From Schmidtea nova (taxonomy: Eukaryota): a DNA stretch of 64,000 nucleotides. The position numbers and the translations under genes are program-made. Positions 47,482 to 56,100 of this stretch are shown here, piece after piece. Position 1 is the stretch's first letter; each line of letters starts with the position of its first letter. Location: contig CM097882.1 in NCBI GenBank assembly GCA_044892505.1, positions 542,686,001-542,750,000 of the forward strand. The letters run 5' to 3'. The notes below the pieces were generated by a model. That model saw only the letters and a list, made by a program, of their open reading frames with translations. It did no database searches and had not been told where the DNA came from.

Positions 47482-47519
<38 letters not shown>

Positions 47520-48337
47520 TCACCAGTTTGGAGGAAAGGAAGTGTACACATTATGCTGTCATTAGAAAAGAGATGAGAACTATTAAGAAATTGAATTTTA
47601 ATCGAAATTCAGCAAATTGTTAAATTTATGTTTTCAATAAAGTTTCATTACAGTTGAGTTTAAGTTTCTTGATATAACAAAAGTAGTTATTTGAAAATAC
47701 GTCTTACCGAAATTCATTTGAAATCCAACTAAATTGTGATAATATTTCTTTAAAAAATAAATTTCAATAAAAAAGAGCTAAATATTTACAAACGTTTTTT
47801 ATTAGAATATGCTAAACACATTTTTACAGGTCCATAAATAAATCGGGGTAGTCAGGTAAGTTAGTAAATTATTTTGAGGCCAAACTATGATTTTACAAGT
47901 AATAATCTAAAAATAAATAAAAAAAAATAAAATGGTAAAAAAAATTATTAATAAAATTTTGATCGTCTATTTTATATATTTATAGATTTCTTTAGAAATA
48001 AAGATAATTTATAACATCAAAACTTTTAACGCTGAAAGATAATTTTCAGATCAAATTAATATTTTAATTGAACAATTTGATTCAATATGTTCTTACGAAT
48101 TGCGACTTTTTTAATTTTTAATTTTTTTTTATAATTTCTCAAATATTGAAATTTCATTTCATCGAATAATCAGTTCTGGGCTTTTTGGAGCTGTAGGCGT
48201 TTATCAGGCTGGAAATAAAATTCCTTTTAAATTTGGAAACAAAACAAAATGGAAAAATTTTGTCCTCAATTTATTTTGCTAATGACGATAATGATGATGA
48301 TAACAATAAAAATAATAATAATAATAAACATAATAAT

Positions 48338-48382
<45 letters not shown>

Positions 48383-48537
48383 TGGCCCGCTTTGTAAAAT
48401 ATTAAAAAAGTAATTAAATAAAAATAAAATGGTAAAAGGCGGGGCTTGATACTGTGAGAGATTGTGGGCGATCCTGGAAGTCTGAAGCCGGCAAACGGTC
48501 TTATCGAAATCTATATAAATCATATATGATATAGCAT

Positions 48538-48849
48538 ATGCACCACAACATGGGCGGTGCAATTGAAATTCATTCTTCTATTAAATCTGTGATACATTCA
48601 CTCGTCGGATCAGTTGTAATCAATGTTGTTGAAGGATCGGCACTCGGCGCATTATACAAAATGGATAATTATCTTCACAGCAGACCATGTGTTTTCAAAT
48701 CACTATTTCATCAGCATTCCAACTCTCGGACTATAGACTTAATCGATTCACCGATTTCTTTAAGTGCTCATCAATTGTCTCCTGAATTATATTACAATTT
48801 CAACAGTGCGCCACAACCCCATAGTGGACGGAGAGAATATCAGGACTAA
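48538..48849 (+). CDS. Hypothetical 103-aa ORF in cassette 1
   Basis: Open frame starting at the position occupied by the TRAF-like ORF in cassette 2. No family recognised. Confidence 0.3.
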   Translation: MHHNMGGAIEIHSSIKSVIHSLVGSVVINVVEGSALGALYKMDNYLHSRPCVFKSLFHQHSNSRTIDLIDSPISLSAHQLSPELYYNFNSAPQPHSGRREYQD

Positions 48850-49338
48850 TTCCAATTGTGATTTTGATTTTGTGGTAATTGGGATTGAGAACGATTGTTT
48901 GTTTTGTGATTTTGTGATTTAGAATTTTGTTTTTGAAAATTTACATAATAATTGTGAATTAGAGAATTTTTGTAATTTTGTAATTTTATATTTTTTTGTT
49001 AAAGTAGAAAAATTAAGTTTAATTTTAGTAATGATTGAGAATTTTTATATTTGAATTATGGAAAAATTTTTATATATTTGATTTAAAGTAGAAAATTTAG
49101 GTTTTGGTGTTTTAAATAATTTTTTGTAAATTGGTGGGTAATTTAGTTGTTTAAATAATGATGTTGTAATATATGGATTTTGAATTTTGCTTTATGGAAG
49201 ATTTATTGATTTAAATTGGTAATTTGATTAGGAATAGATGCTTTTCAAATTGGGCTTTATTTAATTGGATTGGATTTCGGAATTTTGTTTGGAAATAAAT
49301 GGATAAAAGCTTGTAATTTGAATTTTGTTAAAATTATT

Positions 49339-49900
49339 ATGGCTCGAAGATATGAAACTAGAACAACTATTTTGTCACTAGAAGGTCGTTTATATCAGTT
49401 TGAATATGCAATTGAAGCTGTAGGGCTGGCACTTGCTTGGGAATGGTACCAAAAGACGATGAAACAATTTTCTCCGAGAAGATTTACAAAATCAAAGATG
49501 ATATTTCATGTGCAGTGGCTGGGATTACATCGGATGTTAACATTTTATTGGATAAATGCGACTGAATGCTCAACGTCATTTGCTAACTTTGCAAGAACCA
49601 ATTCCAGTTGATCAATTGGTAATGCAGATTTGTGATTTAATGCACACCTACACAATGTATGCTGGCCGACGGCCTTATGTAGTCTCTATGCTCTTTATTG
49701 GATGGGATAAAGAATACGGCTATCAGTTGTTCCAGTCAGATCCATCTGATAATTTTGTCGGGTGGAAGGCCACTTGTATTTGTTCGAATTCGGCTGTGGC
49801 TTCCTCCATTCTAGAACAGGAATACGATATTGATAAACTTGACGTGGAAAGCGGCTTACAGCTCTGTGTTAAAATTCTTTATAAAGAGATGACAGCTGAC
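49339..49900 (+). pseudogene. PSMA4: 20S proteasome alpha-3 (PSMA4-like) pseudogene, intronless, frameshifted
   Basis: [27 protein letters not shown]; [52 protein letters not shown]. Confidence 0.9.
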
Positions 49901-51604
49901 ACTGAACGCTATGAAAGGATCAAGAAAATCAGAAGAACCCGGCCGAAATCAATAATAATAATAATAATAACCTTTAACAAATTAAAAGTTTTTCAAGTTA
50001 TTAGTGAAATACGAAAATTCGAAGAATTTATTTAGCTCATGATAAATTAAAATTCTAAAAGTTGTTTTAGAAGTTGATGAAATAAAACTGACGTAAAACC
50101 TGAAATTACGGTAAACAAATCTAAACAGACAAAATATTTTACAAAAATTATTACACCTTAGTACGGAGAAGTGAGTGGTCTGACACAAGCCATTTATCCC
50201 TAAACTATAAAAATTACGAATTAATTATACAGTGAACCCCTAACCCCCGAAAGTTATACAGTATTAAAAATCACTGCATGTGTTACGAAAGCATTTTATA
50301 ATACTTTTTTTTATGTAATCGATGACATGATACTAAAAATGTTTAATTTAATTTTTATAATTTTCTTTCAAAAATATAAAATTAATTAATTTTTTCAAAG
50401 ATTTTTAAAATGGTCAGAAATGTAAATGGTCACCATCCTACTCAGAACTGAATAGCGATCAAAAAGAGTAAGAAAGTAAAAATATTAAAAATTTGTCTCA
50501 TCCGACCAAATTACACACGTACAAAAGGCTGACTCTGGAAATTTTCAAAAATTAAAAAAATGGTCAGAATTCAATAGTTTATATACCAATCTACTGAGAA
50601 TTGGTCTGGTATTTTTGTATAGAATTTTTAACTCTCAGATTTTTCTTGGGTAAAAAATGACTTTGATATTTTCTATAGGCAATTTTGGTATGGGTTTTTC
50701 TATTGGAATTTTTGCTCTGGTTTTTTCGTATAACATTTTCAACTCTCAGATTTTTCTCAGGCAAAAAGATGATCTGGTATTTTTGAACAGGGATTTTTGG
50801 TCCTTTTATTTCGAATAGAGAATTTGCTTCCAGTATTTAGTACATGATTTTCTACTCTCACAGTTTCTTCAGACAAAATGGTAATCTGGTAATTTTGAAC
50901 TGGAATTTTTTAATAGAGACACGTGTAAATATTTTGAACAAGTAAAATAGATTTAAAATATTTTATATAGGATTTTTTACTCTCACAATTTCTTAAGACA
51001 AAAAGAGAATCTGGTATTTTTGTACAGAATTTTCTACTTTCGCAAATATGTACAGGCAAAAAGGGTCGACTCTGGTAATTGTGAACTGAAATTTTAAAGT
51101 ACTTAATTTAAGAAAAGCTGTATTAAACATGGGGGTAAACTAAAAATGTTTGAATAGACAATAAAGCATGGAGAATTTTACAAAGACAAAATGATAACAT
51201 AATATTTAAAAAGTAATGAAAATGGTAAAATAAGGTAAGCTCAGAGTTTGAAATGACAATGTAAATTTTTTTAAAAATAAGTACTAATTTTTTTGGGTAA
51301 ATTTGAGAGTGTGTTAAATTTAAAAAACAAATTTCAAGTAAATTATTTTAAATTAAAATTATTATGAATTTTTGTATTCAGATATAAAAGTACTAAATTT
51401 ATGAAATATGTGGCTAAATTTAACTATAAAAACGGAGAATTTTACAAAGAGTGGTCGCGCCCGCTTTTAAAATATTTTTGGAAAATTAATTAAATAGTAT
51501 TTAAAATAATTAATTGCGGAGCTTGATTGCTGTGAGAGAATGTGGAGCAAGCCGGAAGCCGTTAGACGGTTTTATCGAAATATATATAAATCTTATATGA
51601 TGAA

Positions 51605-52300
51605 ATGTCATCTTTGCTTAATAATTTACCAGACAATATCAAAAGGTACAGAAGACGGTCTTTTACCTTCAACTTGACCGATAACCTGAAATGTGTCATT
51701 TGTTCTCAACTTCTTTTAAGTGCAATGCAAACTGATTGCGGTTGCCGATATTGTCAGGAGTGCATTGAGGAACATCTAGCCAACAATGGACCATGTCTAA
51801 CAAAAGGCTGTTCAGCAATCATCTCCACAATGCCTGACAACGCAATCAATAAGGAAATCGGCAAGCTCATTGTTAAATGTTTGTATAACGAATGCGTTCA
51901 TAAAGAAATGCTAAAAGATATAGGAAACCATTTGGATAATTGTCAATACAAGTCGTTAGTCTGTACAAAATGCAAAATAGAAATACCCGGGAAAACGTTA
52001 CCGGAACACGTGCTGAAAGAGTGTGTCAAAAGGATTGTCAAATGTGAGCATTATGAATGTAGAATGGAATATGAAACATTGATCAACATTCATTTGACTT
52101 CATTTTCTGAAAATATCTGCCCGAATTTTGTTGCCAAGTGTCCATAAGAATCCGATTTTGGCGCAGCTGTAAATTTACTGGCCCATCGAAAAGAATGTTC
52201 CAAGAAACCAATTACGTGTCCGTTGGCAGAATTCGGTTGCAGTAAAATTATGACGATGAGGATGCATTTAGTCACGTCTGTGTGCGCAGTGGTGTTGTAG
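51605..52300 (+). CDS. TRAF-like RING plus TRAF-type zinc fingers, no MATH domain; stop at 52145-52147 with similarity continuing ~50 codons
   Basis: CVICSQLL..AMQTDCGCRYCQEC; IVKCLYNEC..HLDNC; CTKC..H...EC; CPLAEFGC. Confidence 0.8.
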
Positions 52301-52562
52301 GGACAATTTTTATGTGGCTGGATTGGTGTGTGCACACAAACGCGAGGTTCAATTCGACTTGGAGGAAAATAAATCAATTGGGTTTTCGGTTAAAAACCTT
52401 TGAGACATTATTGATTTGTTTTACTGTGGGAGTTAATTGGTTTTTATTGGCGGGTTTTCGATTTTTGTTTCGTTTTGTGGTTTTTTGGGAAGTAACTTTT
52501 GGAATTTTGGACATTTTCGTTGTGGAATTTTTAATACTTGAATTATTATTTAATAAATTAAA

Positions 52563-53130
52563 ATGTCTTTGGGCTCGATTGTTTTTGATCGTTATATGAC
52601 TATTTCTTCACCCGAAGACAGATTATTTCAGGTTGAATATGCATTTAAAGCGATTGCGTTAGATGGATTACTTTCTGTTGGTGTTCGAGATAATCATTGT
52701 GGCGTAGTTGCTATACAAAGAAAAGTCCCAGATAAAATGATTGAAAAGAGTTCAGCTACAAGATTATTTAATATAACTGAAAGGACCGGTATGATTCCTG
52801 ATTGCAGATCGCAAGTATGCAGTGCACAAATATAAGATGCACGATTTAAATGCAAAATTGGTTACGAAAAGTCTTGTGACATGATTTGTCTATGTATTGC
52901 CGATATTAATCAATTGTACACTCAATCAGCTGCAATGATGCCATTAGGCTGTTCAATGATCGCATTTTCTTATGATAAGGAGATGGATAAGCCACTGTTA
53001 TTCAAAACCGGTCGTCGAGCTGTTACAGTCGGTTGAAAAGAGTTGGAAGCTAAAAGCTATGAGGAAAAGAATCTTCGTAAAAATACAGAATTATCAACTG
53101 ATGAGGCTTTTGAATTAGCAATCAATTCTG
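52563..53130 (+). pseudogene. PSMA6: 20S proteasome alpha-1 (PSMA6-like) pseudogene, intronless
   Basis: FDRYMTISSPEDRLFQVEYAFKAI; QRKVPDK; IADINQLYTQSAAMMPLGCSMI; stops and deletions. Confidence 0.9.
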
Positions 53131-56100
53131 AGCTTCTAATCAACGCCAGGACACTTTTAGAGGATCCTCGTCAAATGGAAATCAATCGGAGCTGGACGCG
53201 GCCAACCAAAGAGAATAATAACATAATATTTAAAAATTAATAAAAAAGATAAAATATGGCAAACTCAGAGTTGAAATGATATAATATGAAATTTTTAAAA
53301 ATAAGTACTAAATTATTTTGGGAAATCTGAGAGTGGGTAAAATTTTAAAAAACTAATTTCAAGTAAATTATTTTATTTAAATTATTTTAAAGTAAAATTA
53401 TTATAAATTTTTGTACTAAAACTTAAAAGTAATAAATTTATGAAACATGTGGTTAAATTAACAAAGACAAATCATGGATAATGTTACAAAGACAAAATAA
53501 TGAATAAATATTTAAAAAGTAATGAAGAGTAAAATAAAGCAAGCTCAGATTTGAAAATGACATAATATTTAGAAATTTTAAAATGAACTATAAGCAAAGT
53601 AATTTAATGACATAATATCAAAAATAAGTACTAATGTTTGGGAAATCTAAATAATTCAAGTGATGTATTAATTAAATATTCAAATTTCTTTAGTAATTCC
53701 CCGACAACTGTAATTAATACCGAATATGCTAATTTCCGAAGAAATTTGAATATTTAAATAATACATTATATGAATTTTTTAAATATTTAATTAATTTTAA
53801 TTTTAAACACAAAATTAGCTATTAAAACAAAATCAATTTAGAATAATTATGAAAATAAAAATTAATCACTTTTTAATAAAAAAATAACAATTTTAAGTAC
53901 TGAATGGGGAAAATATCGTTGGTAATTTCATTGAATGAGAGGAAATTCAAGTGAGAAACTACATTAAAAATAGGGGATTTCTTATAATTCATTGTATTCA
54001 ATCAATTCATTGAAAACATTTAAAGAGGAAAATAAAACTTTGATGGAACATTTATTCGAATGATAAATTTCTTAAGGAAAATATCATTCATATTGATAAT
54101 ATATGTAGTGAAAATACACAAAGTTTTAAATTCATTCAGAATTCTACTGAAAATAGGTTTATTCATTGAAAATGGGATAGTCAATTAAAAATGGATTAAT
54201 CTATTGAAAAAGAGACAAAGTAGATGACGAAAACCACTCGTTTATTGTTTTGACTCTTCAAAGCATCTTGTTACAATAAATATTTTCATCCGTTAACAAG
54301 ATATTTCAAAGACAATCTCCGATATTGTTATCATAATATTCAGTAACAGAACCTTCCTAGTAGAACCTTTAGTAGCAAAACCTCTTTTGTGATGGTTTTG
54401 TCTGTAAAGGTTTCATACTGTATATTTTTACTCATACGACTATTGTTACATTTTAGTAAATTTTATCTGGTAACAGAATCTTTCTAGCCGAACCTTTATT
54501 AACAGAACGTTTTTTGTGATGGTTTTTTCCTGCAAAAGCTTCATATTGTATTTTCACTCATATACTATTATTAGTAGATTTTTAATATATTTTTAATATC
54601 AAATATCAGAACCTTTCTAACAGAACCCAAGTATCAGAACCTTGGTATGAAAAGTGTGAATTAATGAAAGAACTAGTTATTGAATGAATGATTTCTTCGA
54701 GAAAAGTGATTATTTTCAATGAATGTATTGATCTTTGTGAATATATTTGAGATATTTGATTGGTTAATTATTTAAAAAACTGAGTGAATTGGCAAGTTGA
54801 ATCTAATTAAATTGAATCTACTAAAAAAAGAGTAATCTGTTTAAATTTGTGAATCATCAATGGATATATGATTCAAATGGAGCTAAAATGAGAGAAATCT
54901 GTTCAAAAGTAGTAATCCAAAAGAAAGGTAATATAATAGTAAATTGTTAATTTTTCCATTGGGAAATATCATGAAAATGGGTGAAATCTAGAATTTCAGA
55001 GAATTGTTTGTAATAACTTTGAATTCATATCCTTTAAATTAACAGAGTGAATATTTACCTGAATCAATTTGAACATTTAATAAGTATCAAGAACTGATGT
55101 ATTTTAATTAGAAATCCATAAAAAGTTTACTAGCTGGTTATATTATCATTTTAATACGTTTAACTAGTTAGTGGGGATTTTATAATTATTTTTAAAATAA
55201 TTATACATGTTTTGATTTGGTTTTCAAGTGACAAATTAGAGGGCAATGATTTCAATTAATCTTTGTTTAAAAATAATTTGTATTTTAAATATATTCTAAA
55301 TGTTAAAAACTTTATTTAATAAAAGATTTCATTTTAACAACGTGATTATCTCTATACTATTTTCAAATATTTTATTCCAAATGAAGCGTATGTAATAAGT
55401 AGTATATTTATATAATACAAATGGGTTTTTAAGAAGTTTGTTGAGCCCATCAGTGTCTCCTGTAAAAACTGTCTCGGGACTGCAGGGATGCTTGGTATGT
55501 TTTATTTATGTGTATGAGTATGAGCTGGGTATATAATTATGGTATTAACAAATAGTATTAACAAATTTAACCCACTCATTAACAAATTTTATTTACTCAA
55601 CGTATATAAAATATTTAAATAACACCTACTCAAGTAAGTAATAAATTAATTTTTATGTCACGAAATATAAAATCAGTTAGTTTTTTGCGAAATTTGCTTT
55701 AATTAACTTTGATTATAAAATTTTGACTTTGTCAGATTTTTTAAGTAGTAATATTTCTTAAAATGTTTTTTTAATACACTACTGTAATTCCAGATAATAT
55801 TAAGTTGATTCATTGACAATTATTTGGTTGAAACTTATTAAGACAGAACAAGTTTGTATATTGACTAGTCGATATCTAGCTATAAGGAACAGATAATTGA
55901 TTGATATGGGAAAGTGAAGATTTATTTGGTTAATACATAGGGTCATTTAGTATCTGATTAGTTGATTTAGAAAATTGATTGCGGATAGAGTCAGTTGGTA
56001 TTTGATCAATAATTTATTTATTAATTAAATTAAATTTTGAAAAATTAAATTAAGTTAAACTAAAATAAAATTATTTTAGTATTATGTCGTCGATTACATA

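What the first reader, a model, noticed from the sequence alone, without database searches (positions are those of the whole stretch)
48383..53204. Two sister cassettes that each captured a different ORF plus a different proteasome alpha subunit
Seen: both start with the same ~150-bp region (gcccgcttt...gcttgat..tgtgagag..tgtgg...ttatcgaaat.tatataaatc) that places a TATA-like motif 20-30 nt before the first ATG. Then come a cargo ORF (unknown vs TRAF-like), a C-poor spacer, a 3'-truncated intronless proteasome alpha gene (alpha-3 vs alpha-1) and a weakly similar 3' end with a short inverted GGCC motif. Cassette 2 has an imperfect ~8-bp duplication. Inference: Pack-type gene-capturing elements in an animal genome; parallel capture of two paralogous proteasome subunits in the same slot is unexplained.
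Basis: partly seen in the sequence, partly recalled or inferred. Interest (0 to 1): 0.7.

Follow-up and report, generated by a model that had tools for sequence, protein, structure and literature searches.

The report
Solo LTRs carrying captured host genes
The two "cassettes" are leftover end-blocks (solo LTRs) of a very abundant flatworm retrotransposon family; each holds a copy of the cell's spliced leader followed by swappable, intron-free pieces of host mRNAs, here including broken copies of two proteasome subunits.

Summary
The described layout is in the sequence, but the elements are not Pack-type DNA transposons and nothing was captured at this locus. Both cassettes are solo LTRs with TG..CA ends. 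Cassette 2 has a perfect 5-bp target duplication. Related copies elsewhere lie next to a polypurine tract or a tRNA-iMet primer-binding site. The family has hundreds to thousands of copies in this 1.25-Gb flatworm genome.

Every LTR shares a ~105-nt head followed by a ~40-nt motif ending in ATG that looks like a flatworm spliced leader (SL). Directly after that ATG the copies diverge completely into sense-oriented, intron-free host-gene pieces, forming 17 cargo groups among 60 junctions. They re-converge on a C-poor linker and a 3'-truncated PSMA6 or PSMA4 module beside the LTR end.

- The "unknown ORF" is a PPME1 fragment.
- A second SL type travels with other cargos.
- The PSMA6 module evolves neutrally, so it is a passenger and not an accessory gene.

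The most likely mechanism (inferred) is that reverse transcriptase switches to a co-packaged trans-spliced host mRNA and returns through SL homology. Earlier notes from this scan report the same family on other DNA of this genome. No RNA data or true SL RNA gene could be read, so the SL identity and the mechanism remain inferences.

The parts
48288..48382 (.). (ATA)n microsatellite into which cassette 1 is inserted; (AAT)n continues after its 3' end
   Evidence: TRF, period 3, 31.7 copies. 13 of 30 related LTRs also abut (AAT)n/(ATT)n.
48383..49945 (+). Cassette 1: solo LTR of the PSMA4-type lineage; both tips are slightly eroded (5 bases missing after TGG; terminal CCA lost)
   Evidence: The whole unit recurs in 30 of 30 fetched loci at 75-95% identity. 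Family termini are TGGTCGCGCCCGC...ATCAACCA.
48383..48486 (+). U3-like head shared by all LTR lineages
   Evidence: positions 1-150 are shared by 24-26 of 27 sampled LTRs.
48487..48528 (+). Spliced-leader-like motif ending in ATG; copies diverge immediately after it
   Evidence: It resembles the M. lignano SL in its CGGTCT start, ATG end and length (PMC8629364).
48529..48849 (+).
   Evidence: PDB phmmer on a better family copy, E 9e-12, residues ~114-171. No Pfam hit for the window copy.
48850..49330 (+). C-depleted GT-rich linker
   Evidence: 2.1% C.
49339..49951 (+). PSMA4 (alpha-3)-derived module, intron-free, 3'-truncated, broken
   Evidence: Pfam Proteasome 6e-26. PDB PSMA4 4e-38 on a family copy. 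Frame pieces at 49378-49431, 49422-49562 and 49556-49951.
51447..51451 (.). Target-site duplication AAGAG, left copy
51452..53208 (+). Cassette 2: solo LTR of the PSMA6-type lineage, TRAF-cargo subfamily
   Evidence: TG..CA ends and a perfect 5-bp TSD. A paralogous repeat unit shows the empty site. About 12 TRAF-cargo copies at 88-96% identity.
51452..51556 (+). U3-like head
51557..51599 (+). Spliced-leader-like motif ending in ATG
51600..52300 (+). Cargo 2: 5' part of a TRAF-like mRNA (RING + TRAF zinc fingers, no MATH domain), one stop at 52145
   Evidence: Pfam zf-TRAF 4.4e-5, RING 1.5e-3, second zf-TRAF 3e-3. Start codon 6 nt after the SL junction.
52301..52562 (+). C-poor linker, shared with other PSMA6-type LTRs from 60-320 nt upstream of the PSMA6 ATG
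52563..53126 (+). PSMA6 (alpha-1)-derived module, intron-free, ends near residue 200 of 246, two in-frame stops
   Evidence: More than 1,575 such copies in the genome.
53181..53208 (+). LTR 3' terminus (...GGCCAACCA), an imperfect inverted repeat of the 5' tip
53209..53213 (.). Target-site duplication AAGAG, right copy

Best explanation
Both cassettes are solo LTRs of one large group of LTR retrotransposons in a flatworm genome. The full-length relatives I could read look non-autonomous.

Each LTR is built as follows:
- a ~105-nt head;
- a copy of a spliced-leader exon;
- a variable slot filled with a sense-oriented, intron-free piece of a host mRNA that usually starts at that mRNA's 5' end;
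- a C-poor linker;
- a 3'-truncated proteasome alpha module (PSMA6 in one lineage, PSMA4 in the other);
- about 20 nt of LTR tip.

Shown: the LTR identity, the copy number, the sharp junction after the SL-like motif, the cargo diversity, the host-gene origin of the modules, and their neutral decay.

Inferred: cargo enters during reverse transcription. While copying the LTR part of the element RNA, reverse transcriptase switches to a co-packaged trans-spliced host mRNA and runs to its SL-bearing 5' end. The nascent cDNA then anneals to the SL copy in the element's 3' LTR and carries on. Plus-strand synthesis then puts the new cargo in both LTRs, and later retrotransposition and LTR-LTR recombination scatter it as solo LTRs. 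On this view the proteasome modules are the oldest cargo layer beside the LTR tip. They are passengers, not working genes.
For: LTR identity:
- The ends are TGGTCGCGCCCGC...AACCA, and 22 of 25 complete PSMA6-type LTRs have perfect 5-bp duplications, 17 of them outside microsatellites.
- LTR1-type copies show the same pattern.
- A polypurine tract directly precedes L003, L014 and L064. A primer-binding site directly follows L010 and L067.
- The PBS is the exact complement of a tRNA-iMet-type 3' end that exists in this genome.
- Same-strand SL pairs lie 4.0-5.6 kb apart.
- A paralogous repeat unit gives the empty site for cassette 2.

Abundance: 832 head candidates, 703 hits to the SL-type-A pattern against 0 in the control, more than 1,575 PSMA6-like copies and 748 PSMA4-like candidates.

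Junction:
- All LTRs share nt 1-150, then similarity drops to zero right after the terminal ATG and returns 60-320 nt before the PSMA6 ATG.
- There are 17 cargo clusters in 60 junctions, all in sense orientation.
- Start codons lie 0-25 nt after the junction.
- Pfam/PDB name TRAF, Argonaute N domain, UFL1, DUF4743+NUDIX, kinase, SIKE, CAP-Gly and PPME1.

SL identity: a second SL type with the same 5' half and a different 3' half, also ending in ATG, sits in LTRs with other cargos. That is expected if each cargo arrived with its own leader.

Retro-origin:
- LTR copies are continuous across the three intron positions of the M. lignano PSMA6 gene.
- The C-terminal 40 residues hit only three places, which are the candidate host gene.

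Passenger status: omega is 0.82 in frame against 0.90 and 0.82 out of frame.

Precedent: LTR-mediated retroposition by template switching (PMC5131818), and SL fragments near LTR/LINE elements in parasitic flatworms (PMC12582326).
Against: - No RNA data: the only public runs behave like low-coverage DNA contigs. The transcription start, the poly(A) site and the U3/R/U5 limits are therefore unknown.
- I could not read a true SL RNA gene. The SL motif followed by a GTNNGT donor has no match in the assembly, and no held paper prints the planarian SL.
- The PPME1 cargo starts at an internal residue (~147), not at the mRNA's 5' end.
- An outside contig shows a C-terminal EAP30 piece fused inside PSMA6. 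Not every junction fits the simple model.
- The autonomous partner was not identified. The BEL/Pao integrase next to one copy may be only a neighbour.
Confidence: 0.8

Rival explanations
1. Pack-type (Pack-MULE/CACTA-like) DNA transposons that captured genomic gene fragments.
For: A shared terminal region, host-gene cargo and a short duplication at cassette 2.
Against: - There are no long terminal inverted repeats, only about 10 nt of imperfect TG..CA tips.
- The duplications are 5 bp in 22 of 25 copies.
- Some copies sit beside a PPT or PBS.
- The cargo is intron-free, always in sense, and joined at an mRNA leader.
Confidence: 0.02
2. Ordinary LTR-mediated retroposition without any role for the spliced leader. 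The element RNA was trans-spliced once, which left an SL copy in the LTR. Cargo then entered by two microhomology switches, as in Drosophila, and the junction after the SL is only a hotspot or a survivorship effect.
For: This model is documented in animals (PMC5131818). The PPME1 and EAP30 junctions are not at mRNA 5' ends. SL fragments in flatworm retroelements have been ascribed to trans-spliced element RNA.
Against: At least 17 independent cargos begin at the same base after the terminal ATG. Most have a start codon within 25 nt. The SL type changes with the cargo. Random microhomology switches would not do any of this.
Confidence: 0.12
3. The proteasome alpha modules are accessory genes kept by selection, for example truncated alpha subunits that disturb 20S assembly to the element's benefit. 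That would explain why two lineages hold paralogues in the same slot.
For: - Two paralogues sit in the same slot.
- 12 of 26 sampled PSMA6 modules keep an open frame.
- Unchecked scan notes mention PSMG1 and PSMD1 pieces in related LTRs.
- Ubiquitin and HSP90 pieces lie inside a related element.
Against: - In-frame omega (0.82) equals the out-of-frame controls (0.90, 0.82), so no protein-level constraint shows over the family's divergence.
- The open frames fit young age (mean dS 0.07).
- The truncation points are not homologous: about residue 195 versus 213 in alpha-3 numbering.
- Both window copies are broken.
Confidence: 0.06
4. Plain segmental duplication, or the native PSMA4/PSMA6 loci.
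For: None beyond the two-copy view from a single window.
Against: - There are hundreds to thousands of dispersed copies, each with its own target duplication.
- The flanks are unrelated.
- The modules lack the C-terminus, which is found only at C1:208.74-208.84 Mb.
Confidence: 0.01

Closest known systems
LTR-mediated retroposition / chimeric retrocopies (Tan et al. 2016, PMC5131818; Ty1 in yeast; Bs1 in maize)
   Same: Host mRNA pieces are joined to LTR-element sequence by reverse-transcriptase template switching. The copies are partial and often 3'-truncated. Several genes can be stacked. The chimeras spread further as non-autonomous elements.
   Different: Here the cargo sits inside the LTR itself, not in the internal region. 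One junction is always the end of a ~40-nt spliced-leader copy rather than a 2-10-nt microsimilarity. The family also reaches thousands of copies with many alternative cargos.
Spliced-leader relics in retroposed sequences (dinoflagellate retrogenes; SL fragments near LTR/LINE elements in parasitic flatworms, PMC12582326)
   Same: A leader normally added in trans is found encoded in genomic DNA, which marks passage through a mature RNA.
   Different: Those reports treat the relics as by-products and filter them out. Here the leader lies at a fixed place in an LTR and marks a slot where cargo is exchanged.
Retroviral transduction of host genes, and LTR-borne ORFs such as MMTV sag
   Same: A retroelement carries host-derived or accessory coding sequence, in one case within the LTR.
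   Different: No sign of selection on the carried proteins was found here. The cargo is fragmentary and varies between subfamilies.
Pack-MULE / Pack-type DNA transposons
   Same: A high-copy non-autonomous element family carrying varied host-gene fragments behind a shared terminal sequence.
   Different: Those capture at the DNA level, keep introns, have long TIRs and make 9-10-bp duplications. None of this is seen here.

Membership tests
LTR of an LTR retrotransposon (solo LTR) | 5' TG ... CA 3' termini forming a short inverted repeat | tested here: met
   TGGTCGCGCCCGC...(G)AACCA in both lineages. Cassette 1 has eroded tips.
LTR of an LTR retrotransposon (solo LTR) | 4-6-bp target-site duplication flanking the unit | tested here: met
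   Perfect 5-bp duplications in 22 of 25 complete copies, and AAGAG at cassette 2. Cassette 1 lies in a microsatellite, so it is uninformative.
LTR of an LTR retrotransposon (solo LTR) | Some copies adjoin a polypurine tract (3' LTR) or a tRNA primer-binding site (5' LTR) | tested here: met
   A PPT lies before L003, L014 and L064. A PBS lies after L010 and L067. The PBS complement with an initiator-type T-loop is present in the genome.
LTR of an LTR retrotransposon (solo LTR) | Full-length elements with two like LTRs around gag-pol | tested here: inconclusive
   Same-strand pairs lie 4.0-5.6 kb apart but could not be fetched. The one internal region I read holds HSP90, ubiquitin and coiled-coil pieces, with no Gag zinc knuckle or pol.
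LTR of an LTR retrotransposon (solo LTR) | U3-R-U5 organisation with a transcription start and a poly(A) site | not testable with these tools
   No RNA runs were available.
Pack-type DNA transposon | Long terminal inverted repeats and a superfamily-typical duplication (9-10 bp Mutator, 3 bp CACTA, 8 bp hAT) | tested here: not met
   Only ~10-nt imperfect tips and 5-bp duplications.
Pack-type DNA transposon | Cargo captured from genomic DNA, so introns are retained and orientation is free | tested here: not met
   The modules are continuous across M. lignano intron positions. All 17 cargo groups are in sense.
LINE-made processed pseudogene | Poly(A) tail, variable-length duplications, 5' truncation | tested here: not met
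   No poly(A) tail. The modules are 3'-truncated rather than 5'-truncated, and the duplication is a fixed 5 bp.
Flatworm spliced-leader exon (as the identity of the 40-nt motif) | About 35-45 nt, ends in AUG, found at the 5' end of many unrelated mRNAs | tested here: inconclusive
   The length, the terminal ATG, the CGGTCT similarity to the M. lignano SL, the 17 unrelated downstream mRNAs and the two variants all fit. There is no RNA evidence, and no planarian SL sequence is printed in the held papers.
Flatworm spliced-leader exon (as the identity of the 40-nt motif) | Encoded by an SL RNA gene with a splice donor and an Sm-like site | tested here: not met
   No motif + GTNNGT match in the assembly. 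Other donor forms, or unassembled arrays, are not excluded.

The most novel reading that the evidence does not exclude
This is an SL-guided gene-capture system. Because the LTR contains the cell's own spliced leader, any co-packaged trans-spliced host mRNA shares about 40 nt of homology with it. The mRNA can therefore be recombined into the LTR during strand transfer. The result is a fast-turnover slot that has spread dozens of host 5' gene fragments, each behind a promoter-bearing head, to thousands of sites. That would make it a ready source of chimeric transcripts, of small RNAs against host genes, and of exon shuffling in a regenerating flatworm.
Probability: 0.45. Interest if true: 0.8.

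Novelty: new variant of a known kind. Interest (0 to 1): 0.62.

Why it matters
Gene capture by LTR elements is known but is usually rare, one-off and confined to the internal region. Here a whole LTR family acts as a carrier with an exchangeable slot, and the exchange point coincides with the leader that flatworms add to their mRNAs.

If the SL-homology mechanism holds, trans-splicing makes a large share of the transcriptome recombinogenic with a retroelement. That link between two well-studied processes has, to my knowledge, not been described.

Practically, these LTRs will inflate gene counts in planarian annotations, with thousands of PSMA6/PSMA4-like ORFs. They will also mislead SL RNA gene searches, and they may seed small RNAs or truncated proteins from host genes.

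Tried and rejected
- Rfam scan of 47500-54000: only two chance-level matches, and no snRNA, SL or ribozyme family.
- Hammerhead/retrozyme reading of the head: the motifs do not fit (by eye).
- Literature search for the motif as text, three searches: nothing relevant. Rossi et al. 2014 is not held.
- True SL RNA gene by motif + donor pattern: no match. A pattern with trailing N letters only repeated.
- Public metagenome scans for the motif: none.
- RNA evidence: the four runs holding the stretch are short DNA-like contigs with no usable starts or ends.
- Transcript contigs of PSMA6 relatives (L079, L080): not planarian and no leader.
- 'Unstructured leader' idea for the C-poor linker: its folding energy is not clearly weaker than that of neighbouring AT-rich DNA.
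- Homology-guided swap of PSMA6 for PSMA4: the truncation points are not equivalent.
- Protein Atlas look-up of the internal ORF: the service was busy.
Full-length pairs, parental genes and SL RNA arrays were therefore left unread and not sought by other routes.

Full report
OBSERVATION. Reading 47800-53800 shows both cassettes as described. The heads 48383-48528 and 51452-51599 align at about 80% identity. The 28-nt core holding the 'TATA-like' letters occurs only at these two places in the window, against none in 100 shuffles. Pfam finds TRAF-type and RING zinc fingers in the 51605-52147 ORF, and proteasome alpha signatures in both downstream modules. Better-preserved family copies match solved structures of PSMA6 (E 2e-70, residues 2-200 of 246) and PSMA4 (E 4e-38, up to residue 213 of 261). 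All other paralogues score far behind. The spacers really are C-depleted, at 2.1% and 8.8% C. Both window copies are broken.

WHAT THE UNITS ARE. The genome is a 1.25-Gb assembly with three giant chromosomes, and its best named protein relatives are flatworm proteins. A search of it with the cassette 1 head returned 832 candidates.
- In all 30 fetched loci the similarity runs through the ORF, and in many also through the spacer and the PSMA4 module. The whole cassette is therefore the repeat unit.
- The family boundaries are sharp: TGGTCGCGCCCGC at the 5' end and ...AACCA at the 3' end.
- For the PSMA6 lineage, 22 of 25 complete copies have perfect 5-bp duplications, 17 of them outside microsatellites. 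The three exceptions include one copy preceded by a polypurine tract and one followed by a primer-binding site.
- The LTR1 lineage shows the same pattern: a PPT before L003 and L014, and a PBS after L010.
- The PBS is the exact complement of a 3' end with an initiator-tRNA-type T-loop. That sequence exists in this genome, mostly as a 458-bp tandem array.
- Cassette 2 interrupts a ~270-bp tandem repeat. A neighbouring unit supplies the empty site, and the duplication is AAGAG.
- Same-strand pairs of the head motif or the PSMA4 module lie 4.0-5.6 kb apart, which points to full-length elements of roughly 6 kb.
- The one internal region I could read runs PBS, an HSP90 fragment, 1.2 ubiquitin repeats, an acidic coiled-coil ORF and then the PPT. 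I saw no Gag zinc knuckle and no pol, so these elements look non-autonomous. The BEL/Pao integrase beside it may be only a neighbour.

THE JUNCTION. The 60 head copies in my loci all carry a ~40-nt motif ending in ATG, and the sequence changes completely at the next base.
- A coverage map of 27 LTRs shows positions 1-150 shared by nearly all. Similarity then falls to zero, and it returns 60-320 nt before the PSMA6 start codon.
- Clustering the 350 nt after the motif gives 17 unrelated groups. Among the 20 junctions sampled through PSMA6 rather than through cargo, there are 15 groups.
- All cargos are in sense orientation, and most have a start codon 0-25 nt after the junction.
- Those that can be named are a TRAF-like RING protein, an Argonaute N domain, UFL1, a DUF4743-NUDIX protein, a kinase, SIKE, a CAP-Gly protein and, in cassette 1, PPME1.
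- Most are N-terminal parts. PPME1 starts internally.

THE MOTIF. It starts and ends like the published Macrostomum lignano leader (CGGTCT......ATG). From memory it also resembles other flatworm leaders. I could not check that against a printed planarian sequence.
- Four LTRs (three different cargos) carry a second version with the same 5' half, a different 3' half and again a terminal ATG. That version has 119 genomic matches, against 703 for the first version.
- Two leader types that travel with particular cargos are what one expects if each cargo arrived as a trans-spliced mRNA with its own leader.

ORIGIN AND STATE OF THE PROTEASOME MODULES.
- More than 1,575 PSMA6-like stretches cover residues ~4-200 without interruption. 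The M. lignano orthologue has introns within that span.
- The C-terminal 40 residues find only three places, at C1:208.74-208.84 Mb, which are the candidate host gene.
- PSMA4-like copies number in the hundreds.
- Among 26 PSMA6 modules the mean synonymous distance is 0.07. Omega is 0.82 in frame and 0.90 and 0.82 in the two wrong frames. The protein is therefore not under detectable constraint, and the open frames in 12 of 26 copies reflect youth.
- The two paralogues are cut at non-equivalent residues, so one did not replace the other through homology.
- Why alpha-ring proteins occupy the layer next to the LTR tip in two lineages remains unexplained. Chance among abundant housekeeping mRNAs is the default.

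MECHANISM (inferred). LTR elements are known to pick up co-packaged mRNAs by template switching (PMC5131818). SL fragments near flatworm LTR/LINE elements have been noted and set aside (PMC12582326). The pattern here fits a special case:
1. cDNA synthesis from the PBS through the LTR switches to a host mRNA.
2. It runs to that mRNA's leader.
3. The nascent end pairs with the leader copy in the 3' LTR.
4. Synthesis continues into the head.

This predicts an exact 5' junction, variable 3' junctions, sense orientation, 3'-truncated cargo, nested older layers and cargo-linked leader types. L055 shows a nested layer, with a new cargo ahead of the tail of the PPME1 piece. The model does not by itself explain the internal PPME1 start or the EAP30-PSMA6 fusion in an outside contig.

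LIMITS.
- There are no RNA data.
- No SL RNA gene was read.
- The copy numbers are lower bounds from capped searches.

EARLIER NOTES. Earlier notes of this scan describe the same family at other places of this genome, with the same reading: solo LTR, built-in leader, swappable cargo. I reached the LTR and SL readings before opening them. I tested the shared claims on my own loci and treat the notes as agreement, not as evidence.

Noticed in passing
G000 C1:510,090,091-510,134,979 and beyond (outside the window): A tandem array with a 458-bp period, each unit containing a tRNA-iMet-type 3' end. There are more than 1,000 matches genome-wide. Such arrays sometimes also hold SL RNA genes.
   Followed up: no
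window 50150-51451 and 53209-53700: A diverged tandem repeat of about 270 bp (units ~78% alike) that hosts cassette 2. TRF misses it at default scores.
   Followed up: partly
L078 (ENA ERZ2272692, 826-bp contig) 1-826: A contig from another public assembly. It has a C-poor stretch, then an EAP30/SNF8 C-terminal piece fused in frame to the PSMA6 module from about codon 48. Relatives of this LTR family therefore exist outside this assembly.
   Followed up: partly
L034:971-2757 (G000 C1:146,462,971-146,464,757): A decayed BEL/Pao pol end (integrase zinc finger, rve, DUF5641) directly upstream of a 5'-truncated copy of the cargo-bearing element. It is either a neighbour or the autonomous partner; this is undecided.
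   Followed up: partly
G000 C1:208,740,428; 208,819,926; 208,841,309 (minus strand): Three identical matches to the PSMA6 C-terminal region, which is absent from all LTR copies. They are probably the host gene in a triplicated segment, or assembly duplicates.
   Followed up: no
L001-L030 upstream flanks; window 48288-48382: About 13 of 30 PSMA4-type LTRs abut (AAT)n/(ATT)n microsatellites. This suggests either a target preference or microsatellite growth at the insertion sites.
   Followed up: no
L049:2461-3232 and L063:440-1336: One LTR subfamily carries the N-terminal domain of an Argonaute/PIWI-like gene as cargo. This would be of interest if LTR transcripts feed small-RNA pathways.
   Followed up: no
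window 21028-44089: Other first-stage notes place a Polinton-like element with short introns upstream in this window. I did not examine it.
   Followed up: no
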